Virus record (IMG/VR): IMGVR_UViG_3300025012_000028
Span: 150,554-214,553 of that record
Reading direction: 5' to 3' (one strand)
Length of the DNA stretch: 64,000 nt
The position numbers and the translations under genes are program-made. Under the pieces are notes generated by a model. The model was given only the letters and a program-made list of their open reading frames with translations. It did no database searches and was not told where the DNA came from. This document shows, piece after piece, positions 6,662 to 52,154 of the stretch (position 1 is the first letter of the stretch; the number at the start of each line of letters is the position of its first letter).

Positions 6662-6952
6662 TTATCCTTCCACCACGAAGATTTTTCTTGCGGCACGAAT
6701 TTCTTTAACCCTATTTACATCGAAGGAACGATATTGTTTTTTACTCATTTCAAATACCGTCACAATGTTATCAGGAGATGCAGCTTTGTTCTTGGAAGGA
6801 TTTTGGACCAGATGTTTATAAACTCCCCTGCGGCAATTCATCTTGCGTTCCGAACCGTCCTTTTTCTCAAAATGTACAGAAAAAATAGCACTCTTGGGGA
6901 TCATACACAGGATCATCTCAACTTCTTCTTTCGAAATGGATATTTTTCTCAT
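6662..6952 (-). CDS. SH3/WYL-like beta-barrel phage protein (DUF2693-like)
   Basis: FSVHFEKKDGSERKM, VFEM.KKQYRSF. Confidence 0.7.
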   Translation of the reverse strand: MRKISISKEEVEMILCMIPKSAIFSVHFEKKDGSERKMNCRRGVYKHLVQNPSKNKAASPDNIVTVFEMSKKQYRSFDVNRVKEIRAARKIFVVEG

Positions 6953-7141: not shown

Positions 7142-8023
7142 ATGTCTAGAAAACTCACAAATGAAATCATCGATGAACGTCTACTAGGAAGAAAAATTAT
7201 CAGAATTGGTGACTATAAAACTGCATTAACCAAAATATCATGGAAATGTTTGAAGGATGGTTATGTTTGGAACGCAACACCACACGATATAAATTCAGGA
7301 TATGGATGTCCTGCTTGTGCCAATAAAATACCAATTACGAATGAAACAATAGACATCAAATTACAAAACAGATCTATTGTCCGAATTGGCGATTGTATTG
7401 GACAGAACAATAAAATTTTATTCTGTTGTCAAATATGTGATTATCAATGGGTCACAACACCGAAAAGTATTTTACATGGAAATGGTTGTCCTGAGTGTTC
7501 GGGTAAAGTACCATTAACAAATGAAAGAATCGATAATAAATTATCAAATAGACCAATAAAAAGAATTGGTAATTGTACCGAGGGCAATAAAATTAATATA
7601 GAATGGCAATGTCTTATAGAAACTTGTGGTTCTATATGGAAAGCTTCGCCGGGTAGTGTATTGAACAATTTCAGAGGATGTCCACATTGTAGGTACAAAA
7701 ATGAAAAACGTATATATGACTATTTAAGAGAACAGTATTCCCAATTAAATATTACTCCTCAATATAGAATACATATAAACAACAAACTTTTTGTGATAGA
7801 TTTCAACCTCAATGATATATTCATTGAATATCATGGCATTCAACATTACGAACCAGTTGAATATTTTGGTGGAAAGAAATCTTTTATCAAACAAATTAAA
7901 CGAGATTACTTACTGAGGGAATATTGTAGTGAAAATAAAATCAAACTTATAGAAATACCTCATTGGTTTACGAACGATGAACAATATGAATTGTTACAAT
8001 TTTCGTTAAAAACTTCGACATGA
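7142..8023 (+). mobile_element. Free-standing putative homing endonuclease: 3 Zn-ribbon repeats plus PD-(D/E)XK/Vsr-like domain
   Basis: Three C..C-W.A.P...GCP.C repeats; IDFNL..IFIEYHGIQHY, RD...YC..NKIKLIEI. Confidence 0.8.
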
Positions 8024-9174
8024 TTCCTAGTAGGCCCATATGAAACCATAGCAATGTTTTTATTCTTGATAAATTCTCTCACATTTTGGGAAATAATTTG
8101 GCCTTCATCAATATATTTTATTGTTTCATCTTCCAATTGATCAACACAAGTCATACAAACTTTGTGGATTATACAAACACCTTTGTTGTTGTTTTCAAAT
8201 AAATCTTTTCTGATAGCTTTTCTAATCAAATCAAGGTTTAAAAAACTAAACCTTAAAGTTCCTTGCCATTGATTGGGAATGTTGGTGGCATCGATGATAT
8301 TGCAATAGGGTTTATCTACCAATTCCATTGGCAATGGTCCGTTACCGTGTCGAGTAGTATAAGTTCGCATAACATAGGTAACTTCAATTTCTTTTATATC
8401 CATTTCAACACTCAATTCTATTATATTATTCAACCCCGTCTTGGATCTTGTGACATACGGAAAGAATTCGTTATTTTCATCAAGAAGTAACCCTTGAGCA
8501 CCTTCGAAAATAACGTTTTTATATCTTTCACTTATATCTTTAGCAGACGATAAAATGATTATTCCTTTAAAGAATTCTAAATCTTTAATATACCGATTGA
8601 TCATATTTTCATTTTCCATCAGTGATTTATAATTATCTGGAATAGTTTGAATTTCCAACTTTTGGATTCGTTTATATGCATATTGTTTGATTTTTTTAAG
8701 TTCTTCATATTCGGAAGTTAAATTAAAAATTAGTCCATTTATGTCGTGTCGTTCGATAGTTTCCGAAATGCCCATTCCACAGGAACCATGACGATTACCG
8801 CCACGCATATCTTCCATCATTTGGTTGAGGATCATGTCATATGGAGTGGTCACTTTACAAGAAGGATCGACATACACAATGGGTTTAACCCCCTTGGAAA
8901 CAAGTTCCTCATACTCCTGTCGGAAAATGATGGGATTGACAATGAAATGTTTGGAAAGGAAAGTGGGCGAACCATTGAAGCTACCGCTTCCAAAATGGTG
9001 GAATACATGGCGAACTCCTTCAGGTGTCACTACGGTATGTCCTGCCTGTGCTCCACCGTTAAAACGTACCACCACGGCTTCCTCGTTGTACTTTGCAGAA
9101 AGGTAATCGACCTGTTTCCCTTTTGCACAATCCCCAAACCCCGAACCTATGACAGCAAATCCTTTCATACTCAA
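7960..9174 (-). CDS. purA: Adenylosuccinate synthetase-like protein (divergent family)
   Basis: GFGDCAKGK, RFNGGAQAGHTV, FEGAQGLLLD, FPYVT.S, Y.TRHG.GP. Confidence 0.85.
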   Translation of the reverse strand: MSMKGFAVIGSGFGDCAKGKQVDYLSAKYNEEAVVVRFNGGAQAGHTVVTPEGVRHVFHHFGSGSFNGSPTFLSKHFIVNPIIFRQEYEELVSKGVKPIVYVDPSCKVTTPYDMILNQMMEDMRGGNRHGSCGMGISETIERHDINGLIFNLTSEYEELKKIKQYAYKRIQKLEIQTIPDNYKSLMENENMINRYIKDLEFFKGIIILSSAKDISERYKNVIFEGAQGLLLDENNEFFPYVTRSKTGLNNIIELSVEMDIKEIEVTYVMRTYTTRHGNGPLPMELVDKPYCNIIDATNIPNQWQGTLRFSFLNLDLIRKAIRKDLFENNNKGVCIIHKVCMTCVDQLEDETIKYIDEGQIISQNVREFIKNKNIAMVSYGPTRNHVEVFNENCNNSYCSSFVNQ

Positions 9175-9413
9175 CCCTCCATTGTTTTTAATAGATTTTC
9201 AATATTCCACGAATGTCTGTGTGAACCCTGTTTTAGTGTAGCGCGGATCATCACCCTCTTTAACGATGATCCTTTCCTAATTTTTGTGGCACGAAACCGC
9301 ATCCACTTCCACAGATAAAAACGAATTATCCCAACTTTAAATGGAGTGCCGATACCTCCAAAATAATCGAATACTCGACCACCACTGCGATGAAGGTAAT
9401 AATCGTATTTCAT
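9171..9413 (-). CDS. Hypothetical protein
   Basis: ORF track, ATGA coupling to purA-like gene. Confidence 0.45.
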   Translation of the reverse strand: MKYDYYLHRSGGRVFDYFGGIGTPFKVGIIRFYLWKWMRFRATKIRKGSSLKRVMIRATLKQGSHRHSWNIENLLKTMEG

Positions 9414-9573
9414 TATTTCAACCTATTCATAAATGCCTGAAGTGCTGTCTTCAAATTAGCAGTTTCAAAAGAAACATCGGGCGCTTCGATTAAGAAAATT
9501 TCTTCTGTGATACTGTTTTTATTTTCTCTTTTATGAACGGCAGTTATACTAACCCTATATGTTTCTTCCATCT

Positions 9574-9900
9574 TTATTCCTCCATTAAAAATTTAGATTT
9601 TTCTAACCATTTGTTAATTTGATGCTCGGTGAACGCTATTGGGAGTTTACCTTTCCTATAATATTTTTTAAGATGATCTGGAACAACCCAACCTTTATTA
9701 TCTTCTCTTGCTGGAACCCAATACTCGGTTCTGTGATCGGGTAATGGTTTACAAGAAAAACCCATAAAATAAACCCTTGGGTGGTACTTCACGGCCCATT
9801 TACAATAGGCATCCACACCACCTTTCTTGTGGTCTATCACACCTATCAGGCGATAGACAACATCACCATAATAATCTGAATGGTGGATTTCTGTTTTCAT
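9574..9900 (-). CDS. Hypothetical protein
   Basis: ORF track; start MKTEIH after GGAGG. Confidence 0.5.
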   Translation of the reverse strand: MKTEIHHSDYYGDVVYRLIGVIDHKKGGVDAYCKWAVKYHPRVYFMGFSCKPLPDHRTEYWVPAREDNKGWVVPDHLKKYYRKGKLPIAFTEHQINKWLEKSKFLMEE

Positions 9901-10104
9901 TTTATTATCCCTCCGCAATTCGTTCAAAGTTCATCATATCAAATTTCATTTTGCGTCTACCCATTCTACCCAGACGTTTCAGATCTTTTTTGGGAGGAGC
10001 ACAACAGGAACATTTCCACCCACCAATCCCAATACAAAGATATTTCTCCCTCATACGTCTGGTGATCAAGATTGGTGATTTCATAATTCCTCCTCAGATA
10101 AATT

Positions 10105-10148
10105 AAAAGCCTGAATAAACTTATATCATTTATTCAGGCTTTTGTCAA
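10105..10148 (-). promoter_or_regulatory. Terminator hairpin with embedded promoter TTGACA-17-TATAAG
   Basis: 15-bp IR 10105-10119/10129-10143; -10 in loop. Confidence 0.8.
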
Positions 10149-10166
10149 GATTTATTTCTTATTAAT

Positions 10167-11090
10167 TTAGAACGTCACGATACCACCAGCAACGGTTCCA
10201 TTTGCCGCAAGGTCTTTGATCGCCTTGGAAACTACCACACCAGTCGTTCCATCCCACGAAGCAACCACGTCTGCAACATCGGCGCCCTCGGTTGCCTGAA
10301 TGATGGACACGATAACCTCAGACATCTTGCTTGCATCAGCAAGAGGAATTGCGTTCTGACCGAGAATTTTGCTCCACGAATCACGAACCCTGACACCATG
10401 ACTCATCATGTAGTTGCCCTGTTCCACCATCAGATGGAACACATGATACTTCCTCGATACCATCATCAACAGTTCTTCAGCAGAGAAAGCATCTTTTTCG
10501 GGTCGATACCCAAGATATTTCTCAATCAATCCTGCTTTAATGGGAGGAGGTACACATTCATCACCGGCAGTGAAGAGATAACCTTTTTTTCCACGCTTTT
10601 CAAAGCAGTCGATGGAAGTGTGCATTGCTGCGAAGTACCAAGGAAAAGTGTACGATTCCGATGAGTTACCACCGCCCCGACCTTCCAGATAAATCTTTTG
10701 AAGCTGTTCAGCAATGCGAATGTCTGCTTCAAACTGAGTCACAGACAGCGGAGCGACTTCGTACATCTCTGCATCACCGATTCCCATGAACATGATGTGC
10801 GGATCGGAAATTGGTTTGCGGTCATAAATTTCCGTTGCCAGAGTATTACAACCTTCACGGATCATCATACGCGCAAGAGAACCCATTGAACCGGTCTGAT
10901 CGATGCCAACAATCAGTGCCGTACTGTTGGGGTTATCTGCGCTATCCCTCGATTCCCTAACTGTGACACCCTTGGGATCGAGTTCATTTACCAGAGTTTT
11001 TGTTGTAAAAAGTCCGGCATCCGAAACACCTTTAACATTTGTGGAACTATAGGAGTCCCAACTGCTCCTGCTCCATGCACCAGATCCCAT
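10167..11090 (-). CDS. von Willebrand factor A (vWA) domain protein
   Basis: MIDAS DQTGSM, GIGD, EG.GGGN..ESY, AGDE. Confidence 0.85.
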   Translation of the reverse strand: MGSGAWSRSSWDSYSSTNVKGVSDAGLFTTKTLVNELDPKGVTVRESRDSADNPNSTALIVGIDQTGSMGSLARMMIREGCNTLATEIYDRKPISDPHIMFMGIGDAEMYEVAPLSVTQFEADIRIAEQLQKIYLEGRGGGNSSESYTFPWYFAAMHTSIDCFEKRGKKGYLFTAGDECVPPPIKAGLIEKYLGYRPEKDAFSAEELLMMVSRKYHVFHLMVEQGNYMMSHGVRVRDSWSKILGQNAIPLADASKMSEVIVSIIQATEGADVADVVASWDGTTGVVVSKAIKDLAANGTVAGGIVTF

Positions 11091-11745
11091 TTTCTTTCTC
11101 CTTTTTAGTTAATAGTTCATAGTAAACTTCATGAATTTTTGTTGCTACTTTATCAACATCACTCAATTCTCTATTGGAGAAACGCATTACAAACCACCCC
11201 AAAGATAATAAATATTCATCTCTAATTTTATCCAACTCAATATTATGAGATAAATTACCACTCCCATAATGATCAAGTTCAATATTTAATTTTACATCGG
11301 GGAAATAAAAATCCAAAATATAATACTTACGGCCATAATAAATCCGTTTGCTCCATTTTGGATTCATCATTTGAAAGATGCGATTTTGCCACAAAACTTC
11401 TTCATAATACGTTCTGCCATTATGTGTTTTTCGGTGGTCATTTATTTCTTTTAAATTATTGATGGCATGTGTCGAATATTTTTCTTTATTTTCTGGTTTA
11501 GCATTCGATATATCTCTAGCAATATCTCGTTTGATTACCAATTCTGGATCGTTATTGACCCTTGTGATATTTCGAATTGAATATTCAATTTGTTTCTGTG
11601 ATTTATTTCTTAACAATAATCGTTCTTTGGATAATTGTTTAATTAGTGAATTGTTTTTATTCCTCCAAATAGCCGCACATGATGTGCTACAATATTTTCT
11701 ATTTGGAGGAATAGATTTACCACAACCATTTTCACAAAACTTCAT
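11047..11745 (-). mobile_element. Putative homing endonuclease, Vsr/DUF559-like C-terminal domain
   Basis: YILDFYFP..KLNIELD, D..RDEYL...GW.VMRFSN; N-terminal C..GC..YCS..C. Confidence 0.75.
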
Positions 11746-11835
11746 TTACGCTACTTCTTCGGTTTTTTCGGTTGCTTCGACTTCAACAACTTCTTCGGCA
11801 ACATACTCTTCGATTTTCAGTGCGGGTGCGCCCAT
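11746..11835 (-). CDS. 29-aa acidic peptide MGAPALKIEEYVAEEVVEVEATEKTEEVA
   Basis: Hand translation; strong AAAGGAG RBS; TAA abuts next ATG. Confidence 0.55.
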   Translation of the reverse strand: MGAPALKIEEYVAEEVVEVEATEKTEEVA

Positions 11836-11851
11836 GTCGTTTCTCCTTTCG

Positions 11852-12235
11852 TTAGAGTGAGTTAAGATGAATTGCTACAGACGGTAATGAAATGAAACTG
11901 TTACCACCATTATTCTGAACCATCTTTGCTACTTTGGTCATAGCTTTGAATTTATGAGAACCAATTTCAAACCCCAAGAAACAGAAAATAGTTTTTTCAG
12001 GACGTTTGTTGCTATCATCAACAACTTCCGCCACGGAATAGATATTATCTTCTTCCGAAGTGATTACATAAAGGCAATAATCACATTCTTTGCGCTGCTT
12101 AAGTTCTTCCTCGTAAGCAGCGTCATTCCACGTTCCTTCAGGAAGTTGTGGGTTGAAATAATCAATACACAACATCTGAATTAATTCGTCCCGCCATATG
12201 GATTTGCCACACGTCCCACCCAGAAAAACTTTCAT
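11852..12235 (-). CDS. Nucleoside 2-deoxyribosyltransferase-like protein
   Basis: KVFLGGTC..S.WR, YFNP, YSVAE. Confidence 0.75.
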   Translation of the reverse strand: MKVFLGGTCGKSIWRDELIQMLCIDYFNPQLPEGTWNDAAYEEELKQRKECDYCLYVITSEEDNIYSVAEVVDDSNKRPEKTIFCFLGFEIGSHKFKAMTKVAKMVQNNGGNSFISLPSVAIHLNSL

Positions 12236-12335
12236 TGGTTTCTCTCCCGTTCATAATTTCTTTCCAATATTTCCATACGTGCTAAATGATACAGTTCTGC
12301 TCTTATTTTGTCAATATCTTTATCAAGTTTATTGA

Positions 12336-12569
12336 TTAATTGTTTTTTAAACTTCTCACATAGAGCCGCAAACTTCTTGCAGCATTAGACATTGATAAAC
12401 ATCCACCACTAACTTCTTCTACAAAAAGAGTGGAATTAACCACAAACCTTTTACCTCTCCAATTGAATCGGATGCTACTCGGATATAATTTAAGATCGCT
12501 GATAGTATTAGATTCGGGTAACTTGCTGTACACCGTTTCAATAATTTCTGCTAATGTTTTCTCACTCAT
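12336..12569 (-). CDS. Hypothetical protein
   Basis: ORF track. Confidence 0.5.
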   Translation of the reverse strand: MSEKTLAEIIETVYSKLPESNTISDLKLYPSSIRFNWRGKRFVVNSTLFVEEVSGGCLSMSNAARSLRLYVRSLKNN

Positions 12570-13578
12570 ACACATCCTCCCATTTCAAATCAAGATGGAT
12601 AAATTTTCTCTCACCATAACTCTCTTTTAGAATTTTGGTGTGCCAAGTTTCATATTCCTTGAACGGATCATCCCCCGCACCATATTCCAACCAGTTTTGG
12701 AAAGCTTTGGGAGCCTTGGCCTTCTCCAACAGTTTGCGCCCAAGTGCCTTAACAAATTCACCATCGGTGGTGCAGCTTGCCAGCTTGGATGCCCTGACAG
12801 TAGGAGGAACCGAATTATAAAGGTGTGATGGAACAGCAATCATCTTCTCACCGATATTGGTGGTGAACCACCACCCACCTAGAATTGCGACAGAGTGATA
12901 TTCGGGAGAAATGAAAATTGTTTCCAGAGAAATACTGTTATTAACTATACCATTAAATTTGAAATAACACAACAGATTATTTAATCTACTTTGCATCCAC
13001 GCCACGTGTTTGTCCCACGCCACTGGATAACCTTTGGAATTGTAATGATCATATACATCCTTTAATAGAAGTTGATCGGGTGTTTTGCTCACCACGATAA
13101 CGAACCTGCTATCTTTACATTTGAAGTTTTTCTTAATGGTGGGAAGGTATCTGCTGAACTCCTTTTTCATATCTTCGTTTGCATACTTAAAGGATTTCAC
13201 ATTTCGTAAGTAATTCTCATAGAACTTAATATGATCCTTATCCAGAACATATGCTATGACAGTTTTGGAAATGTACATCTCCCCCAATTCGAATTTATGT
13301 TTCTTCCTGAAACCAATTCGATAGGTGGTATTGTGTTCATCGGTGACGTAGACCACAAAAGGAATTTCCCATTTCCCCTGTTCGATCAGTTCAACCGACT
13401 TGGTGTACATGTCCTTAATGTGAACAAAAACATCGTTGGCATTGGATTCTTTATAACGATCAGGATGAAATTTCATGCTGAGAGTTTTGAATTCACTTTT
13501 AGCCACATCAATATCATTGCTGAAAATCTCACAGGGATTGACAATTTTTAATAGTTCGTTGGCTGTGAAATCTTTCAT
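12562..13578 (-). CDS. J-domain (HPD) fused to protein-kinase-like domain, probably a pseudokinase
   Basis: FKTLSMKFHPDR; HVAWMQSRL, IVNNSIS, ILGGWWF where HxD and DFG are expected. Confidence 0.7.
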   Translation of the reverse strand: MKDFTANELLKIVNPCEIFSNDIDVAKSEFKTLSMKFHPDRYKESNANDVFVHIKDMYTKSVELIEQGKWEIPFVVYVTDEHNTTYRIGFRKKHKFELGEMYISKTVIAYVLDKDHIKFYENYLRNVKSFKYANEDMKKEFSRYLPTIKKNFKCKDSRFVIVVSKTPDQLLLKDVYDHYNSKGYPVAWDKHVAWMQSRLNNLLCYFKFNGIVNNSISLETIFISPEYHSVAILGGWWFTTNIGEKMIAVPSHLYNSVPPTVRASKLASCTTDGEFVKALGRKLLEKAKAPKAFQNWLEYGAGDDPFKEYETWHTKILKESYGERKFIHLDLKWEDVYE

Positions 13579-13797
13579 TTAACTTGTCCTATATTGGATT
13601 TGGTTTTCTTCAAACACTTTAATCGCAGCTTCGAAATAATATTCCTGATCGAAGAGAAATATGAATTCTGAATATCCTATGTCCACCACATTCCTGATTA
13701 ATGGTTCGATCTTCCAGAAAACTTCAGCAGTCTCTTCCCACGAATCGTTCACATAAACAAGCTGAATGATCCATGTTTTAAAAACAGGCCATTCCAT
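13579..13797 (-). CDS. Hypothetical protein
   Basis: ORF track. Confidence 0.5.
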   Translation of the reverse strand: MEWPVFKTWIIQLVYVNDSWEETAEVFWKIEPLIRNVVDIGYSEFIFLFDQEYYFEAAIKVFEENQIQYRTS

Positions 13798-14258
13798 TAG
13801 GCAAGCCTCTTGGATTTGATTAAATCAATGAGTTTATATTCTGGAGACTCGGGTGGAAAATAGTATTGGGAATGAATATTACTATTTTCATCTATTTCTG
13901 AAATATTAAAGTAGTACCCATCATCAAATTTAACTGCATTAAAATATCTTTCTGGAACAATCACCCCACAACAAGTAATAATCCCACCAAGAGAATCTTC
14001 ATCTTCGTGGAACTTATCAAAGGGTAGATCCATAGAAGGGCATATTTCCCAAAGAAGATTAAATATATCCTCAATATCTTTTCGATTGCCCCCATTGAGG
14101 ATGATGATAGTTTTATCATGTCCTGCCCAACGATTATATCTTTTGCTTCTCGCACATTTCTGAGATAGATCACCCACAAGATGTGCCGTTTGTAGGCCAT
14201 GTTGAAGCGGCGAAAGATAAAAAATTACAAATGAATAAAGCCTGAGTTCTTCTTCCAT
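13797..14258 (-). CDS. Peptidyl-tRNA hydrolase 2-like protein
   Basis: LS..Q.GLQTAH, W...KTIIIL, F.E..LGG..T..G. Confidence 0.65.
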   Translation of the reverse strand: MEEELRLYSFVIFYLSPLQHGLQTAHLVGDLSQKCARSKRYNRWAGHDKTIIILNGGNRKDIEDIFNLLWEICPSMDLPFDKFHEDEDSLGGIITCCGVIVPERYFNAVKFDDGYYFNISEIDENSNIHSQYYFPPESPEYKLIDLIKSKRLA

Positions 14259-14277: not shown

Positions 14278-14321
14278 AAAAAACGTATCCGAACTTTACA
14301 TCCGAATACGTTTTTTGTCAA
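14278..14321 (-). promoter_or_regulatory. Terminator of late operon with embedded promoter TTGACA-17-TAAAGT
   Basis: IR aaaaaacgtatccgaa/tccgaatacgtttttt, -10 at loop, T tract follows on minus strand. Confidence 0.75.
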
Positions 14322-17216: not shown

Positions 17217-20200
17217 TTATACTAGTGTTAATGTGGTACTCCGCACTGTGCCGTCCGAACCCTTGACTTTTACCGTCAAGGTAGTGTTGTCGGTCAACTC
17301 GAAAGTCATTTCCCCGTTTACTGTTGGTGTTGCCGACGTGAGGGGAAAAGCTGAAACGTAATCCGTTGTAGGGGTGTAGGCTGCTGTACCAAGGTTTGAT
17401 GATTTCACCAGCCCGTTTATTATAAACGTCGAATAAACCCCACCGTCATTAGTGAGTAGATAACCATCGCCGGTCCCTTGATCTTGTTCATACTGGTTAA
17501 TGATAGTTGCCATCATGATGATGCCATCATGAACTGAGACCAAGGAGCCAGAGCCGAACACTGTGGACCCACTTAGACCCGCCCCCGGTGTGGCTTCTCG
17601 TGCCTGAAAGATTGTGCCGACTGCATTGGACGTAGAAACATACCCGACTTGAAGCGGCGTAAAATCAGCATCGGTGTTATTTAGTATCTTATACCACCCT
17701 CCGACCTCAATATTCGTCAAGTTCGTATAAGAAATCGGCGTGCTGGCGAAAATGGCCCTCGATTGCCGTCCAATTCCCTGTTTTGATCTCAGATCGTCAC
17801 CATTGACCCTGAGATTAAGCATATAATAGTTACCAAGAACCACACCGTAACGAACTGCTGGTGTGCCGGAAACATACCCCCCATTGCCATCTACTGTCAT
17901 ATCGAGAGTGCTGGCATACATTCCATAACTAGAGTTGCCCAACCGGAATCCGTGTGAACCGTTCTCTTGTGCTTCTATTGTACCTTGGTGGTTCGCTCCG
18001 GTGAGAATTACCGCACCTTCAAAGTCATTAGCAGCAGTACCGAAATATGGAACAATATCGACAGATGAACCTGTGGTGGAGATGTTGAGCCGTCTAGAAA
18101 GAAAAACTTTGATGTCGGAATACTGAATATTCTTGTTTGCGAATCTCGCCGCCAAACCCCAGTGCATTGCACCGCCAATCTGGATTTTCGACAATTTGCT
18201 ATCGTTGGCCTTGCCGAGGTCCAGCCCCGAACCATCGACCCGCTGAACAATCAGCCCCTCAATTACTAGGTTGCTAGCGTACCCTTCATCGTTACTAACA
18301 ACCACGCCGTGACCACCACTCAACAGATGCGCTCCAGTGCCGGAATCGCGGATATCGTCGGCTGCGAACTCCTCGCGTAGGCCGTACACGCCTCCAGCGG
18401 CCCCCGATCTGTGTCCCGCGAAGAATTCAACTCTGGTGTCGGAAAGCGTCCGGGAATAAGTGTTGTCCACACCTTGGGCAATGTATATGCCGCTCCCCAC
18501 CGAGAACAACCCCCCACCAGCCTGACCATCGACCGTAAGCCCATGGATAGACCCGTACGCGCCGGTCCAGCGAATGACATAAAGCAAGGCGTCAGCGGCG
18601 TCATCTCCGGAAGGTTTGAATCGTATCTTACTGGACGCTGAACCATCCCCGATGAGATGCACTTTTGATTTCAACTCAACATCACGCCACCACGTAACCC
18701 CGCGCGGGACAAAAACGGAGCCGCCGTTTAGCGCGGCTTGCACATCAATCGCGGCTTGCGCGGCTGCCGAATCGTCCGAGCCGTCATATTTCGCGCCGAA
18801 CCATTTAACGTTGACCGCCCCGGTGTAATCCCTCAGCCATGCAGCCGAACCGTCGCCGCCTGTCGGCACAATGACGGTGCCGTTGTTGTCGGTGTAGGTG
18901 CCCGGTGAAGCACCTGAAACCCAACGGAAATGACCTCCCCCACCATCTCCTGCCGAAGTGTGATTCTCAAGGTATATAGATGGCACAGTGCCGTTCGTGA
19001 TGCCTCGTAACGCCGTGAGGTTTGTCACGACCAAGCCATCCATAGCATCTTGCACCGCCTTGACCGCTGCCGAGTTCGCCGCCGTGGTTGTGGAGTTAGA
19101 AGTAGTGGAGGATGAAAGCTCCGATGTTGATACAATATCCCCGAACTTTAAACCACCCACAACTTTCGATGGGTCGAAATTGTGTGGACCCACAAGTACC
19201 GGTTCTAGTGCTGCCGCCACATCAACTTCAGTAGTAGGAGGATATGTCTCTGAGTTAATTTTTCGGAAGGATAAGATTGTAGTTCGTGAAGCATTACCAT
19301 CTATCAAAAGATGTTGTGCATCGGGCGCTGCCGCAGCACCTATGGTGTCCTGTCTTGACATTCCCGAAATAATACTGTTACCTTCCCCACCTGAAATACG
19401 GTAGCTCCTGCCGGGAAACTCAGCAGACCTGTTAATGTTGGCTTCCACACCGGACCCACTCAGAGTTACGGCGTTAGCACCGTCCAACCAAAAACCTAGT
19501 CCGGCCTGTTCGATATATGTGCCGTTTATATTGACTGTAGTTGGACCATATAGATAGACCCCAAGGATAATATCTCGTACACTAGAACTAATAAAAGTAT
19601 GACCGTCACCACCATCTATAAATATTCCGGCATAACCACCTTGAAAAATTTTGACCTGATCATAGGTACAAAATGCACCAGTACCCACATAAAGTGATAT
19701 ATCATTGAGGTAACGTAGATGAACATTACGTACAGTCAAATTAGTAAGTATTTCTTGGGAGCTAACATGAATATCAATACCTTTATTCCCCGTGCCGACC
19801 CATTGACCCGGACCATCTATCCCAAAATTGGATAGATATACCCAATCTGTATCGACACCTAACAATGCTGGACCATCAAAGTCAGCCTTGATAAGTCCTG
19901 AGTCCAATGGTGACACACCGAAAATACGATGTCCGTCGCGCAGTGTAAGGGGTGCTGATATTTTACACCATGCCGGAAGTAGTATACTAGTTTCTGAGTC
20001 AAGTACAGCCTGTATTGCAGCTCTATCATCCGTTATACCGTCACATACAGCGCCTCTTGTTTTAACATTGACCGCATGTGTGTCTATCTGATCCTGCACC
20101 GCCTTGGTTAAAGAGTTAATTGAAGTTTTAACCGAATTACCATTTTGAACAATAGGTACTTTTTCTAAACCAGATAGTGGTATCGTAGCTTCATTAAATT

Positions 20201-20219
20201 CAGATATTTTCTTTGCCAT
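17217..20219 (-). CDS. Tailspike with two tandem pectate-lyase-like beta-helix modules
   Basis: KKIS head; VNVKTRGAVCDG.TDDRAAIQA and VNVKWFGAK.DG.DDSAAAQAA; tail-fibre repeat linker. Confidence 0.85.
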   Translation of the reverse strand: MAKKISEFNEATIPLSGLEKVPIVQNGNSVKTSINSLTKAVQDQIDTHAVNVKTRGAVCDGITDDRAAIQAVLDSETSILLPAWCKISAPLTLRDGHRIFGVSPLDSGLIKADFDGPALLGVDTDWVYLSNFGIDGPGQWVGTGNKGIDIHVSSQEILTNLTVRNVHLRYLNDISLYVGTGAFCTYDQVKIFQGGYAGIFIDGGDGHTFISSSVRDIILGVYLYGPTTVNINGTYIEQAGLGFWLDGANAVTLSGSGVEANINRSAEFPGRSYRISGGEGNSIISGMSRQDTIGAAAAPDAQHLLIDGNASRTTILSFRKINSETYPPTTEVDVAAALEPVLVGPHNFDPSKVVGGLKFGDIVSTSELSSSTTSNSTTTAANSAAVKAVQDAMDGLVVTNLTALRGITNGTVPSIYLENHTSAGDGGGGHFRWVSGASPGTYTDNNGTVIVPTGGDGSAAWLRDYTGAVNVKWFGAKYDGSDDSAAAQAAIDVQAALNGGSVFVPRGVTWWRDVELKSKVHLIGDGSASSKIRFKPSGDDAADALLYVIRWTGAYGSIHGLTVDGQAGGGLFSVGSGIYIAQGVDNTYSRTLSDTRVEFFAGHRSGAAGGVYGLREEFAADDIRDSGTGAHLLSGGHGVVVSNDEGYASNLVIEGLIVQRVDGSGLDLGKANDSKLSKIQIGGAMHWGLAARFANKNIQYSDIKVFLSRRLNISTTGSSVDIVPYFGTAANDFEGAVILTGANHQGTIEAQENGSHGFRLGNSSYGMYASTLDMTVDGNGGYVSGTPAVRYGVVLGNYYMLNLRVNGDDLRSKQGIGRQSRAIFASTPISYTNLTNIEVGGWYKILNNTDADFTPLQVGYVSTSNAVGTIFQAREATPGAGLSGSTVFGSGSLVSVHDGIIMMATIINQYEQDQGTGDGYLLTNDGGVYSTFIINGLVKSSNLGTAAYTPTTDYVSAFPLTSATPTVNGEMTFELTDNTTLTVKVKGSDGTVRSTTLTLV

Positions 20220-50074: not shown

Positions 50075-50349
50075 TTGTCTCTAAACTCCCTCGGTGCCAA
50101 CGGAAAGAAAGCCCAATGTGTTATTTTATCTGCCCAATATGTGTGGGGTGTTCCGCCAATATAACGCCATTCACCATTAGAACAATATTCCGCAAACCCC
50201 ACATTGGAAATTTCATTTGGTTCGGTATAGTCGGAAAAGTGTACCAACACATCTATAATGATATTAAATTGTCCTTGATTAGTATACTCTTCCAACGGAA
50301 GACAATCTTTGATACTGAACCATTCTATCTCTACTTTATCAGGTTCCAC
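50071..50349 (-). CDS. DUF551-like protein
   Basis: WFSIKD.LP...ITHW...P.AP. Confidence 0.65.
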   Translation of the reverse strand: MEPDKVEIEWFSIKDCLPLEEYTNQGQFNIIIDVLVHFSDYTEPNEISNVGFAEYCSNGEWRYIGGTPHTYWADKITHWAFFPLAPREFRDK

Positions 50350-52154
50350 ATCTGCTCCTCTGTTTTAATTTCCACACCAAGTTTCTGTGCTTTAGTATAT
50401 TTATTACTCTTGTCCCACGAATCTTCCGCACAGAAAAGAATGTCCAAATTCTTATTCACAGAGTCCACAATGGTAGCTCCCAATTCCACACACCTAGCTT
50501 CCAGCTTTGCTTTCTTCTGGGAGAAGCTACCAGTGAAGAGAACTTTCTTACCGGACAAGATACCATCTACAATAACAACTTCTTCTTTGGGTTCCGGTTT
50601 CTTGTAACGGACACTATTGATGATCCTTTCCTTTATGCCCCAATTGACATCAAAAGAAAGTTTAGCTTTCTCCAATGTACGCACACCAATCCCAGACGGA
50701 AGGGAAGTAGTATTGGGATTTTCAAATGTAATTTTCATACTCTCAAGACTACCTACATGGTTCAGTAGACTATCGAAAAGTGTGGTTCCCAAACCGTTGT
50801 ATGGCAGATGTCTCATGATGTTTTCAGCAGTTGTCTCATAGACTTTTTCCTGTAAAGCCACATGGAAGTCGTTTTGAGATTTGTAAGATACATCAGGACA
50901 CCACGAAAGTAAAGCGTCAAATGACGTGACATTCCAATTCAAGAGGGACGATTCAGACACGTTTTCAATCCCAATCGACTTAATGAACGATTCCACACGT
51001 TTGACCTCACCACACTCAAGGTTGGGGCATTGAAGATCAACACCGTCCCACCCAAGAACCTCACCACATTCAGGACACTTGTTAGGTAAGGCGACGGCAG
51101 AGGTTTCGATGATTTCGATAATTTTGGGGATCACACATCCACTTTTGATAATTCCAACCCTAGCCCCGATCCCAAGACCTCTATCTAAAATCCACTGCGC
51201 ATTGTTACCAGTGCAACGTGAAATCGTGCTGCCATCGATATCCACAGGATTCACAAGAGCGACCGGTTTCAGTTTCCTCTCTTTGCTCAAGTTCCATTCA
51301 TAACCCAAGATGGTAGTTTCTGTGAAATCCGAATTAACCTTGAAAGCACTTTTCCTTTCAGGAAGGAATTTATCATTTTCATTCTTCCACTCGGAATCAC
51401 TTATAACCAAACCATCAATGTCGTATTGTGCTTCGTCCTTTGAATTAAGATAATATGCCTCCATGCGATCAATGAGGCTTTCTCCAACACTAAATATACA
51501 ATGTTCAGGAGTTTGAAATCCCTGTACCTTGAGGAAATTGAACTGTTCAACCACATTCAGATTATCTGACAGAACTTGATAAGCAAATGCCTCGACCATA
51601 TGAATATTTTCGGAAACCACATCCCTATTCATAAGGCCAACGGTTCCGTTGCGGCGATTCTTGAAAGAAAGGTGTTCGTGACTGTTATCAGTAAGGGTGA
51701 ATTCACCACGGACATCAGTAGGCTCAAGATATGAAATGGTTTTTGGAATGGAAGGGATTTTCATTGCTTTGTCCGTCCAATCGACACCAGACTCCCCATC
51801 ACCACGACTCGTAACTTTCTTAAGATTGCCGTTACGGTATTCCGCATACCAACTACACCCATCAATTTTCAGAGAAGCAAAAAGGTTTTTAATGTTATTC
51901 TTTTTGATCCATTTCCAAAATTTATCAGGTTCGTCTGATTTGAGTTTTTCTAATGAACCGATAACATAATCAAATTTTACATCTCCTGATGTTTCAGTTA
52001 GAGATTCCTTAAACTCAATAAACTCGTCCCACTTAAGTTCTTTCTGAATCTCTTCCAGAAGAAGGTCATAGGCCGCATCCGAAACCAGTTCGTCGCCGTT
52101 CCGATACGCCTTGTTATATTTTACAGCCAGTTCCATTTTTTCTGCTATGTTCAT
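50331..52154 (-). CDS. ligA: NAD-dependent DNA ligase
   Basis: Y..G...VSD..YD, KIDG, SRGDG..G.D, RGE, DGLV, Zn finger CP.C, C-terminal BRCT. Confidence 0.92.
   Translation of the reverse strand: MNIAEKMELAVKYNKAYRNGDELVSDAAYDLLLEEIQKELKWDEFIEFKESLTETSGDVKFDYVIGSLEKLKSDEPDKFWKWIKKNNIKNLFASLKIDGCSWYAEYRNGNLKKVTSRGDGESGVDWTDKAMKIPSIPKTISYLEPTDVRGEFTLTDNSHEHLSFKNRRNGTVGLMNRDVVSENIHMVEAFAYQVLSDNLNVVEQFNFLKVQGFQTPEHCIFSVGESLIDRMEAYYLNSKDEAQYDIDGLVISDSEWKNENDKFLPERKSAFKVNSDFTETTILGYEWNLSKERKLKPVALVNPVDIDGSTISRCTGNNAQWILDRGLGIGARVGIIKSGCVIPKIIEIIETSAVALPNKCPECGEVLGWDGVDLQCPNLECGEVKRVESFIKSIGIENVSESSLLNWNVTSFDALLSWCPDVSYKSQNDFHVALQEKVYETTAENIMRHLPYNGLGTTLFDSLLNHVGSLESMKITFENPNTTSLPSGIGVRTLEKAKLSFDVNWGIKERIINSVRYKKPEPKEEVVIVDGILSGKKVLFTGSFSQKKAKLEARCVELGATIVDSVNKNLDILFCAEDSWDKSNKYTKAQKLGVEIKTEEQMWNLIK

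What the first reader, a model, noticed from the sequence alone, without database searches (positions are those of the whole stretch)
7960..14258. Candidate uncharacterised system: vWA + J-domain pseudokinase + divergent adenylosuccinate-synthetase-like ligase (with NDT-like and Pth2-like genes)
Seen: one promoter (14293-14321) drives Pth2-like, J-domain/kinase-fold, NDT-like, an acidic peptide and a MIDAS vWA gene. A terminator/restart promoter at 10105-10148 then leads to the PurA-like gene. The kinase fold has NNSIS and GGW where HxD and DFG are expected, but the J-domain HPD is intact. Known: J-domains recruit DnaK, and vWA proteins act as chaperone/ATPase adaptors. Inference: this is a dedicated module that uses host Hsp70 and a PurA-fold C-N ligase to modify a nucleotide or protein, rather than simple AMP supply. 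From memory, a similar trio occurs in some bacterial genomes without a known function; I have not verified this.
Basis: partly seen in the sequence, partly recalled or inferred. Interest (0 to 1): 0.8.

Follow-up and report, generated by a model that had tools for sequence, protein, structure and literature searches.

The report
Conserved vWA / PurA-like / J-pseudokinase module
Three of the flagged phage genes (a J-domain pseudokinase, a metal-site vWA protein and a re-tooled adenylosuccinate-synthetase paralogue) form a gene cassette found in hundreds of large phages and many bacterial chromosomes, often beside ADP-ribose/NAD genes in bacteria, and I found no description of it.

Summary
Only three of them belong together. 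The vWA gene is followed by the PurA-like gene in 81 of 83 viral loci and in 72 of 78 bacterial loci that carry the vWA. In a reverse search, 78 of 80 PurA-like loci carry the vWA. A J-domain/kinase-fold gene lies just upstream in about 117 of 161 loci, including some 200 Bxz1-type mycobacteriophages. The Pth2-like, NDT-like and small genes are not conserved neighbours.

The PurA-like enzyme keeps the catalytic and guanine-binding residues. It has lost every aspartate-recognition residue and several IMP-phosphate contacts. It scores far below the NCBIfam cut-offs for PurA and PurZ. The kinase fold lacks its catalytic residues, but the HPD motif is near-invariant. The vWA protein has an intact MIDAS site and an almost invariant N-terminal Met-Gly.

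In 32 of 78 bacterial loci an NrtR-type ADP-ribose-sensing regulator is adjacent. Some loci also carry pncA-pncB-nadE, PARG or ADP-ribosylglycohydrolase genes.

Best reading: an Hsp70-coupled ligase module, tied to ADP-ribose/NAD metabolism, that joins a purine nucleotide to an amine other than aspartate. The chemistry is inferred, not shown. No description was found in the literature or in PADLOC.

The parts
12562..13578 (-). JK: J-domain (HPD at residues 38-40, about 13459-13467) fused to a protein-kinase fold that lacks the catalytic residues. The window copy reads NNS / GGW; the family consensus is HNG / GGW.
   Evidence: AlphaFold model pLDDT 96.8. Foldseek top hit is the J-PKAc chimera, then kinases including VRK3. 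In a 47-sequence alignment HPD is at least 90% conserved, and no conserved VAIK Lys, HRD Asp or DFG Asp is present. A homologue lies directly upstream of the vWA gene in about 117 of 161 loci.
10167..11090 (-). vWA/MIDAS protein. The MIDAS motif D64-Q-T66-G-S68 lies at about 10887-10901. The N-terminus is the invariant family motif M-G-x-[GSA]-x-[WFY].
   Evidence: Model pLDDT 92.8, matching integrin beta-I, SpaC and Ku80 vWA folds. M1, G2, D64, T66, S68, T158 and D177 are invariant in 43 sequences. The family has about 1,000 clusters at 50% identity with E<=1e-30. 140 of 150 representatives start with MG.
7960..9168 (-). PurA-like ligase, a neofunctionalised adenylosuccinate-synthetase paralogue. 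The P-loop GDCAKGK lies at about 9115-9135. The ORF finder starts the gene at TTG 9174; the ATG at 9168 is the likelier start.
   Evidence: PF00709 E 1e-47 over the N-terminal two thirds. Closest solved structure is E. coli PurA (E 1.5e-24), against PurZ 6FM1 at E 6e-4. Below all NCBIfam PurA and PurZ cut-offs. Residue table against E. coli PurA. Found downstream of the vWA gene in 81 of 83 viral loci and 72 of 78 bacterial loci carrying the vWA. The reverse search gives 78 of 80.
14293..14321 (-). Promoter-like site (TTGACA-17-TAAAGT) overlapped by a 17-bp hairpin, upstream of the Pth2-like...JK block.
   Evidence: Hairpin -18.6 kcal/mol, z -5.7.
12286..12314 (-). Second promoter-like site of the same TTGACAAAA type (TTGACA-17-TATCAT, 11 of 12 matches), with no hairpin. 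It lies upstream of NDT-like, DUF559 and vWA.
10105..10148 (-). Promoter-like site (TTGACA-17-TATAAG) overlapped by a 16-bp hairpin followed by a short T run. It acts as a terminator/restart cassette between the vWA gene and the small-ORF...PurA-like block.
   Evidence: Hairpin -19.8 kcal/mol, z -6.6.

Best explanation
The real unit is a conserved cassette. Its obligate core is a vWA/MIDAS protein followed by a PurA-paralogue ligase. A third partner precedes the pair, and it is usually a J-domain pseudokinase (JK).

Shown here:
- The three genes are syntenic across unrelated large phages and across bacterial chromosomes of many phyla.
- In bacteria the cassette very often sits beside, or in one operon with, an NrtR-type Nudix/winged-helix regulator. 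NrtR is the ADP-ribose-responsive regulator of NAD metabolism.
- Some bacterial loci also carry pncA-pncB-nadE, microbial PARG or ADP-ribosylglycohydrolase genes.

Inferred mechanism:
1. The ligase still binds GTP and activates a 6-oxopurine nucleotide as PurA does. D13, K16, H41, Q224, T239 and D333 are kept.
2. Its aspartate pocket has been rebuilt. R303 is deleted. R131 and R305 are hydrophobic. T301 is Gln, V273 is His and T300 is aromatic. It therefore joins the purine C6 to a different, non-dicarboxylate amine.
3. The vWA protein is the ligase's obligatory partner, acting as adaptor, activator or substrate through its MIDAS site and its invariant N-terminal Gly.
4. JK uses its HPD J-domain to bring host DnaK/Hsp70 to the complex or its client. 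The dead kinase fold serves as a binding scaffold.
5. In bacteria the cassette is switched on when ADP-ribose accumulates, that is, when NAD+ is being cleaved or proteins are being ADP-ribosylated.
6. Phages carry it to run the same reaction during infection. The likely purpose is to cope with NAD+/ADP-ribose-centred host immunity or nucleotide stress. Making ordinary AMP is unlikely to be the purpose.

In this particular phage the cassette has been pulled apart by a homing-endonuclease-like gene, an NDT-like gene, small ORFs and promoter/hairpin cassettes.
For: Synteny:
- vWA in 161 loci, PurA-like in 149, JK in 117.
- reverse search, 78 of 80.
- cultured phages, namely Rhizobium RHph_TM30, Vibrio phiKT1024/Va1 and about 200 Bxz1-like mycobacteriophages.

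Active site:
- residue frequencies in 135 non-identical family members against E. coli PurA.
- nearer to PurA than to PurZ, but far below both curated cut-offs.

Folds and motifs.

NAD/ADP-ribose context:
- NrtR-like gene in 32 of 78 bacterial loci.
- Geomonas, nadE<-pncB<-pncA | nrtR->JK->vWA->PurA-like.
- Competibacter.
- Actinomadura, nrtR-JK-vWA-PurA-like in one operon.
- Lachnospiraceae, with PARG and a Nudix-NrtR fusion directly downstream.
- ADP-ribosylglycohydrolase.
- NMNAT-like or NADAR genes near the cassette in 11 viral loci.

The roles of the E. coli PurA residues (D13 base, H41 acid, T300/T301/R303/V273 for L-Asp, T128/T129/N38/R143 for the IMP phosphate, K331/D333/S414 for guanine) come from the Honzatko/Fromm structural and mutagenesis literature and are recalled from memory.
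Against: - No biochemical, genetic or expression data exist for any member.
- The substrate pair is unknown. The amine could be ammonia, a small amine or a protein.
- The NAD/ADP-ribose link is strong in bacteria but weak in phages (11 of 83 loci). It is absent from this window, where BLAST found no NAD-salvage gene.
- NrtR-family regulators also control non-NAD pathways, for example AraR.
- Many of the 32 NrtR-linked loci come from one family, the Competibacteraceae. The number of independent lineages is nearer 8-10.
- JK is missing from many phage versions, so Hsp70 recruitment cannot be essential to the core chemistry.
- S240->Arg in 89 of 135 members could replace the lost R143. IMP may therefore still be the nucleotide substrate.
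- No structure of the complex could be predicted here.
Confidence: 0.45

Rival explanations
1. Conflict-system reading. The cassette is an anti-phage defence, or in phages a counter-defence, of the NAD+/ADP-ribose type. It is held off by a Nudix-family repressor and induced by ADP-ribose. The PurA-like enzyme is the effector: it makes a toxic or signalling purine derivative, or drains GTP/IMP. The vWA protein and JK/Hsp70 sense or handle ADP-ribosylated, misfolded targets.
For: - The cassette sits in variable genomic surroundings in bacteria and occurs in both phages and hosts.
- It is adjacent to NrtR-like repressors, PARG and ARH genes.
- It parallels the ARG-centred systems with a Nudix transcription factor and a vWA 'chaperone' that Iyer et al. 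2022 predicted to counter viral ADP-ribosylation (PMC9503650, section 3.8).
- The third partner is displaced by an unrelated Met-rich protein, which is typical of conflict systems.
Against: - No PADLOC model matches any of the three proteins.
- The neighbours are mostly housekeeping or salvage genes, not defence islands.
- No nuclease or membrane effector is present.
- The family is moderately conserved (33-45% mean column identity), not rapidly evolving.
Confidence: 0.2
2. Ordinary auxiliary metabolic gene. The PurA-like protein is a divergent but true adenylosuccinate synthetase that boosts AMP/ATP, and hence NAD, supply. The vWA and JK proteins merely fold or stabilise it, PurA being an aggregation-prone enzyme.
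For: - The PF00709 match is clear and the catalytic D13, H41, K16 and Q224 are kept.
- GenBank annotators call it adenylosuccinate synthetase.
- Rebuilding NAD needs adenylate, which would explain control by NrtR.
Against: - All residues known to recognise L-Asp are replaced by other invariant residues in 135 of 135 or nearly all members. R303 is deleted in all.
- It scores 136 bits against the 402-bit PurA equivalog cut-off.
- The bacteria that carry it must also have a housekeeping purA (inference).
- A folding helper would not be expected to stay syntenic across phyla and phages.
Confidence: 0.1
3. PurZ-like, DNA-base pathway. The enzyme makes a non-canonical (deoxy)purine nucleotide, such as 2-aminoadenine or an N6-substituted dA, for hypermodified phage DNA.
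For: - PHROG 1211, the family that also holds PurZ, matches at E 5e-68.
- The enzyme occurs in large phages.
- The changed amine pocket would suit an N6 substituent other than succinate.
Against: - PurZ model score is 54 bits against a 300-bit cut-off.
- PDB PurZ matches at E 6e-4, against 1e-24 for E. coli PurA.
- The same cassette lies in bacterial chromosomes under NrtR-type regulators, where DNA hypermodification is implausible.
- No MazZ, DatZ or DpoZ partner appeared among the conserved neighbours.
Confidence: 0.07
4. The apparent module is a chance neighbourhood of unrelated early genes.
For: In this window the three genes are separated by unrelated genes and by three promoter-like sites.
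Against: The order JK -> vWA -> PurA-like is kept in well over 100 loci from different phyla and phage groups, while all other neighbours vary.
Confidence: 0.01

Closest known systems
Adenylosuccinate synthetase PurA (EC 6.3.4.4)
   Same: Same fold and Pfam family. The P-loop Asp/Lys, catalytic His, Gln224, Thr239 and the guanine-specifying Asp333 are retained. GTP-driven activation of a 6-oxopurine is therefore the likely chemistry.
   Different: The L-Asp pocket is rebuilt: R303 deleted, T301->Gln, V273->His, T300->aromatic, R131 and R305->hydrophobic. The IMP-phosphate contacts are changed: N38->Gln, T129->Cys, R143 lost. It scores far below the curated PurA cut-offs. It is always paired with a vWA gene.
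PurZ (N6-succino-2-amino-2'-deoxyadenylate synthase of Z-genome phages)
   Same: A phage-borne PurA paralogue with changed substrate choice, in the same PHROG.
   Different: The sequence relationship is much weaker than to bacterial PurA. There is no Z-cluster context. The cassette is also present in bacterial chromosomes.
MoxR-vWA chaperone pairs (CbbQ/CbbO, NorQ/NorD, RavA/ViaA, CobS/CobT); recalled from memory
   Same: A MIDAS-bearing vWA adaptor is coupled to an ATP-driven remodelling machine and to a specific enzyme client.
   Different: No AAA+ MoxR gene is present. The ATPase would be host Hsp70, recruited through a J-domain. The client or partner is a PurA paralogue.
TerY-P triad (vWA + Ser/Thr kinase + PP2C phosphatase; Anantharaman et al. 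2012, Gao et al. 2020); recalled from memory
   Same: A vWA protein genomically coupled to a kinase-fold protein in a three-gene cassette found in conflict contexts.
   Different: There is no phosphatase. The kinase is catalytically dead and carries a J-domain. The third gene is a ligase. No PADLOC hit.
ARG-centred, Nudix/WYL-regulated systems predicted to counter viral ADP-ribosylation (Iyer et al. 2022, PMC9503650, section 3.8)
   Same: An NrtR-like Nudix transcription factor, a vWA 'peptide-binding chaperone', and occasional PARG, ARH or NADAR neighbours, with the partners displaced in some lineages.
   Different: The core enzyme here is a PurA paralogue. It is not an ADP-ribosylglycohydrolase plus phosphatase. 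That paper mentions neither PurA nor J-domains.
Phage J-domain proteins that hijack DnaK (e.g. Rki of phage RB43); recalled from memory
   Same: A phage-encoded J-domain with an intact HPD motif.
   Different: Here the J-domain is fused to a pseudokinase and embedded in a three-gene cassette that is shared with bacteria.

Membership tests
PurA (adenylosuccinate synthetase) | PF00709 fold/domain | tested here: met
   E 1e-47, but only profile positions 1-279 of 416. E. coli PurA is the best PDB hit, E 1.5e-24.
PurA (adenylosuccinate synthetase) | Catalytic and GTP residues D13, K16, H41, Q224, D333 | tested here: met
   Kept in 120-135 of 135 family members and in the window protein.
PurA (adenylosuccinate synthetase) | L-aspartate recognition residues T300, T301, R303, V273 (plus R131 and R305) | tested here: not met
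   Replaced by aromatic, Gln (135/135), a deletion (135/135), His (135/135), and hydrophobic residues.
PurA (adenylosuccinate synthetase) | IMP 5'-phosphate contacts N38, T129, R143', T239 | tested here: inconclusive
   T239 is kept. N38->Gln, T129->Cys or Val, and R143 is not conserved. S240->Arg (89/135) might compensate.
PurA (adenylosuccinate synthetase) | Reaches the curated equivalog score (NCBIfam NF002223 / TIGR00184) | tested here: not met
   136 bits against 402, and 125 against 396.
PurA (adenylosuccinate synthetase) | IMP + L-Asp + GTP -> adenylosuccinate activity, or purA complementation | not testable with these tools
   Needs an enzyme assay or genetics.
PurZ | Reaches the NCBIfam NF038379 cut-off | tested here: not met
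   54 bits against 300. PDB PurZ 6FM1 matches at E 6e-4.
PurZ | Genomic partners mazZ, datZ, dpoZ | tested here: inconclusive
   No such family appears among the conserved neighbours of 161 loci. The window was not searched specifically with MazZ or DatZ models.
J-domain (Hsp40) proteins | HPD tripeptide between helices II and III of a J-domain fold | tested here: met
   H38, P39 and D40 are each at least 90% conserved in the 47-sequence alignment, and every full-length sequence printed has HPD. The model has N-terminal helices, and the top Foldseek hit is the J-PKAc chimera. The Pfam DnaJ hit is sub-threshold: 18.8 bits against 27.8.
J-domain (Hsp40) proteins | Stimulates Hsp70 ATPase | not testable with these tools
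   Needs a biochemical assay.
Active eukaryotic-like protein kinases | Kinase fold | tested here: met
   More than 1,400 Foldseek matches at E<=1e-3, mostly kinases.
Active eukaryotic-like protein kinases | VAIK Lys, HRD Asp, DFG Asp | tested here: not met
   The family reads H-N-G and G-G-W, and the window reads N-N-S and G-G-W. No conserved Lys, Glu or Asp is found at these positions. The mycobacteriophage version keeps only the Asn and a DFG-like Asp (HGAITPDN, LIDW).
vWA / MIDAS domain | vWA Rossmann-like fold with the DxSxS...T...D metal site | tested here: met
   Foldseek matches to integrin beta-I, SpaC and Ku80 vWA domains. D64, T66, S68, T158 and D177 are invariant. There is no Pfam VWA hit, so the sequence is divergent.
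TerY-P triad / known defence systems | PP2C phosphatase partner; match to PADLOC models | tested here: not met
   No phosphatase appears among the conserved neighbours. There are no PADLOC hits for six module proteins.
MoxR-vWA chaperone systems | Adjacent AAA+ MoxR ATPase | tested here: not met
   Not among the conserved neighbour clusters.
ARG-centred ADPr-countering systems (Iyer et al. 2022) | ADP-ribosylglycohydrolase core plus phosphatase, with a Nudix or WYL transcription factor | tested here: not met
   A Nudix-NrtR transcription factor is present in 32 of 78 bacterial loci. ARH is present in only 3 and PARG in 1, and no phosphatase is conserved.

The most novel reading that the evidence does not exclude
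The PurA paralogue is a protein-modifying enzyme. It uses GTP to activate IMP (or a related 6-oxopurine nucleotide) and joins C6 to the free alpha-amine of the invariant N-terminal glycine of its vWA partner, exposed after Met removal. The product would be a protein carrying an N6-linked adenylate, a kind of modification not known before. The Hsp70/J-pseudokinase then delivers or remodels the tagged vWA protein, in a pathway that responds to ADP-ribose.

Three observations would be explained together:
- The pocket for the two aspartate carboxylates is lost.
- The vWA -> ligase gene order is strict.
- Met-Gly-x-small-x-aromatic is near-invariant at the vWA N-terminus: 140 of 142 and 140 of 150.
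Probability: 0.12. Interest if true: 0.9.

Novelty: new variant of a known kind. Interest (0 to 1): 0.72.

Why it matters
- The finding defines a widespread cassette that the searches found undescribed. The vWA family alone has about 1,000 clusters at 50% identity, and the cassette is present in model mycobacteriophages such as Bxz1.
- The ligase is annotated everywhere as 'adenylosuccinate synthetase' or 'PurZ-like'. It fails the defining features of both.
- It would be a third functional branch of the PurA fold, with a new amine substrate.
- It would be the first case of a vWA adaptor working with a J-domain/Hsp70 where the described systems use a MoxR ATPase.
- It would add a component to the NAD+/ADP-ribose arms race between phages and bacteria.
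- Cultured carriers exist (Bxz1-type phages on M. smegmatis, Vibrio and Rhizobium phages, Geomonas, Hymenobacter, Actinomadura), so the questions can be tested directly.

Tried and rejected
- Nucleotide search of the region against GenBank phages. Megablast found nothing. Distant blastn found only a 190-nt patch of the vWA gene.
- Pth2-like, NDT-like, p72, p79, p117, s52, s80, p578 and p126 as module members. None recurs in other loci.
- PADLOC: no hits.
- Eight full-text literature searches combining adenylosuccinate/PurA with vWA, J-domain, DnaJ, defence, NrtR or NADAR, plus one for PurA residue roles. No paper describes the trio. The one hit (PMC9503650) describes a different ARG-centred system.
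- ABC ATPase neighbours. These turned out to be a mix of ABC-F and MacB-type genes at varying distance and strand, so they were not treated as linked.
- NAD-salvage or ADP-ribose genes inside this window. BLAST with seeds from related loci found none.
- Profile of the vWA family against PDB sequences: nothing.
- PDB sequence searches for the Pth2-like and NDT-like proteins: nothing useful.
It was repeated without those rows.
- Read mapping was not attempted. Only DNA runs of the source groundwater metagenome hold the sequence.

Full report
**What is in the window.** The window is part of a 214.5-kb phage contig from a groundwater metagenome (IMGVR_UViG_3300025012_000028). It also carries tail-fibre genes, a DnaB-like helicase, an SbcC-like nuclease and an NAD-dependent DNA ligase. 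Between 7.9 and 14.3 kb all genes of interest lie on the minus strand, in this order of transcription:
- Pth2-like, 13797-14258
- p72
- J-domain/kinase-fold protein 'JK', 12562-13578
- p79
- NDT-like, 11852-12235
- DUF559 endonuclease-like gene, 11047-11745
- vWA protein, 10167-11090
- four small ORFs
- PurA-like gene, 7960-9168 (the ORF finder extends it to 9174)

Pfam recognises only the PurA domain (N-terminal two thirds), DUF559, the NDT-like domain and a sub-threshold DnaJ match. PHROGs adds the PurA/PurZ family 1211, an unnamed vWA family, a weak 'kinase' hit and a 'hydrolase'.

**Regulatory signals.** Both hairpins fold far better than shuffled sequence, with z = -5.7 and -6.6. A third site of the same TTGACAAAA type lies at 12314-12286. 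These are the only three copies of that motif in the 64 kb. JK, vWA and PurA-like therefore fall in three predicted transcription units, not one or two. Generic sigma-70-like matches in the region are no more frequent than in shuffled sequence.

**Which genes belong together.** A profile of the vWA protein retrieved 83 viral loci, counting the window itself and two GenBank phage loci. In 81 of them a PurA-like gene follows the vWA gene; the other two contigs end just after the vWA gene. An HMM finds a JK homologue directly upstream in about 50 of them. None of the other window genes recurs. In the 80 loci kept, 78 have the vWA, 72 the PurA-like gene and 68 JK, in the same order. In the reverse test, 78 of the 80 best PurA-like loci in viral contigs carry the vWA gene, but only 19 carry JK.

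Among cultured phages the pair or trio is present in Rhizobium phages of the RHph_TM30 group, in Vibrio phages phiKT1024 and Va1, and in about 200 cluster-C mycobacteriophages of the Bxz1 type. In those it is annotated 'kinase', 'hypothetical protein' and 'PurA-like adenylosuccinate synthetase'. The vWA family has about 1,000 representatives at 50% identity with E<=1e-30.

The obligate core is therefore vWA -> PurA-like. JK is the commonest third partner. In JK-less phages an unrelated protein of 190-260 aa, with a Met/Gly-rich and acidic tail, occupies the same position. It has no Pfam match.

**The three proteins.**

*JK.* The AlphaFold model built from 47 sequences is very confident (pLDDT 96.8). 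Its best PDB match is the DNAJB1-PKA 'J-PKAc' chimera, followed by many kinases, including VRK3. HPD is near-invariant. The family shows H-N-G where HRD is expected and G-G-W where DFG is expected, and it has no conserved beta3 Lys. The window copy is further degenerate, reading N-N-S. The mycobacteriophage version keeps only the catalytic-loop Asn and a DFG-like Asp.

*vWA.* The model (pLDDT 92.8) matches integrin beta-I, SpaC and Ku80 vWA domains. The MIDAS residues are invariant. The protein's N-terminus is strikingly fixed as M-G-x-[GSA]-x-[WFY]. This holds in 140 of 142 non-identical locus sequences, including both copies where the gene is tandemly duplicated, and in 140 of 150 independent cluster representatives.

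*PurA-like.* The closest solved structure by sequence is E. coli PurA (E 1.5e-24), not PurZ (E 6e-4). It scores 136 bits against a 402-bit PurA cut-off and 54 bits against a 300-bit PurZ cut-off. I aligned 135 non-identical family members to E. coli PurA, fetched.
- Kept: the catalytic base D13, K16, the acid H41, Q224, T239 and the guanine-specifying D333.
- Lost from the aspartate site: R303 is deleted in all members, T301 is always Gln, V273 is always His, T300 is aromatic, and R131 and R305 are hydrophobic.
- Changed at the IMP-phosphate site: N38 is Gln, T129 is Cys or Val, and R143 is not conserved, although S240 is Arg in two thirds of members.

The residue roles are from the E. coli PurA structural and mutagenesis literature as I recall it. 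I infer that the GTP-dependent activation chemistry is retained while the amine substrate is no longer aspartate.

**Genomic context in bacteria.** The cassette is chromosomal and is not in prophages in the four carriers read in detail: Geomonas, Competibacter, Hymenobacter and Actinomadura. One bacterial locus, Clostridiales bacterium CCNA10 (L123), shares its flanking gene clusters with viral contigs and is probably a prophage. The only strongly recurrent neighbour is an NrtR-type regulator (NUDIX + NrtR winged helix). It is present in 32 of 78 loci spanning Desulfobacterota, Gamma- and Alphaproteobacteria, Bacillota, Bacteroidota and Actinomycetota.
- In Geomonas the arrangement is nadE<-pncB<-pncA | nrtR->JK->vWA->PurA-like.
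- In Actinomadura nrtR heads the same operon.
- In a Lachnospiraceae contig the trio is followed by a microbial PARG and by a radical-SAM/Nudix/NrtR-WHD fusion.
- ADP-ribosylglycohydrolase follows the trio in three loci.
- In phages, NMNAT(-Nudix) or NADAR genes lie within 8 kb in 11 of 83 loci.

NrtR is known as an ADP-ribose-responsive repressor of NAD metabolism (cited in PMC9503650). The cassette is therefore probably induced when NAD+ is being consumed. This window itself carries no recognisable NAD-salvage gene.

**Comparison with what is known.** Full-text searches found no paper that links a PurA homologue with a vWA or J-domain protein. The nearest description is the set of ARG-centred systems with Nudix/WYL regulators and vWA 'chaperones' that Iyer et al. 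2022 predicted to counter viral ADP-ribosylation. That paper mentions neither PurA nor J-domains. PADLOC has no model for any component. The cassette resembles MoxR-vWA chaperone pairs and the TerY-P triad in logic. It lacks their defining ATPase or phosphatase.

**Mechanism and confidence.** Three things are shown: the synteny, the folds and motifs, and the NrtR/ADP-ribose association in bacteria. The rest is inferred:
- The ligase joins a GTP-activated 6-oxopurine nucleotide to a non-aspartate amine.
- The vWA protein is its obligatory adaptor, activator or substrate.
- JK brings in DnaK.
- Phages use the module during infection in the context of NAD+/ADP-ribose conflicts.

I put about 0.45 on this general picture. 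The rivals are a defence/counter-defence effector system (0.2), a plain AMP-supply enzyme with helpers (0.1) and a DNA-base pathway (0.07).

The most novel reading not excluded is that the ligase attaches the nucleotide to the invariant N-terminal glycine of the vWA protein (0.12). That reading would explain the lost carboxylate pocket, the strict gene order and the fixed N-terminus together.

**Verdict.** It is wrong to include the Pth2-like and NDT-like genes. The finding is a real, widespread module that the searches found undescribed, and its chemistry is unknown.

Noticed in passing
window 11073-11090 (vWA codons 1-6); families in L001-L163 and P0001-P0150: The vWA protein's N-terminus is almost invariant as Met-Gly-x-[Gly/Ser/Ala]-x-[Trp/Phe/Tyr], with a second aromatic at position 11. 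This holds across phages and bacteria whose proteins are only 35-60% identical. No explanation accounts for it so far.
   Followed up: partly
L001:4699-5526, L002:5057-5770, L029:7151-7807, L213:2468-3085 and about 60 other viral loci: Phage versions that lack the J-pseudokinase carry an unrelated 190-260 aa protein directly upstream of the vWA gene. It has a conserved N-terminal half, a Met/Gly-rich low-complexity stretch and an acidic tail. It has no Pfam match. The ESM Atlas finds only viral hypothetical proteins.
   Followed up: partly
window 14293-14321, 12286-12314, 10105-10148 (minus strand): The only three TTGACAAAA-type promoter-like sites in the 64 kb lie here. Two are overlapped by strong 16-17 bp hairpins. 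They resemble the promoter-early stem-loop cassettes reported to flank shuffled early-gene modules in T4-type phages (recalled from memory).
   Followed up: partly
window 11047-11745 (-) and 7142-8023 (+): Two mobile-endonuclease-like genes interrupt or abut the module. A DUF559 protein overlaps the vWA start by 44 nt. A plus-strand protein with three DUF4379 treble-clef fingers and CapR homology overlaps the 3' end of the PurA-like gene by 64 nt.
   Followed up: partly
L120, L141, L142, L147, L150: Some bacterial cassettes carry two tandem vWA paralogues between JK and the ligase. Both keep the Met-Gly N-terminus.
   Followed up: no
L174:2538-3668 (Mycobacterium phage NoodleTree gene 257): The Bxz1-type JK passes the Pfam Pkinase threshold. 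It keeps the catalytic-loop Asn and a DFG-like Asp (HGAITPDN ... LIDW) but lacks the HRD Asp. It may still bind nucleotide, unlike the window copy.
   Followed up: no
L173:12052-14259: A 735-aa fusion of a radical-SAM/HemN-like domain with a Nudix domain and an NrtR winged helix lies directly after the trio and a microbial PARG gene in a Lachnospiraceae contig.
   Followed up: no
window 50331-52154 (-): The phage encodes an NAD-dependent DNA ligase, so it consumes NAD+ itself. BLAST with seeds found no NAD-salvage genes in the window.
   Followed up: no
window 18001-20000: G+C rises to 0.50, against about 0.36 elsewhere. The rise falls inside a 1000-aa tail-fibre / EPS-depolymerase-like gene (17217-20219).
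   Followed up: no
window 6662-6952 (-): A 96-aa protein just downstream of the region matches the WYL_2 Sm-like domain. This ligand-sensing fold is often seen in conflict systems.
   Followed up: no
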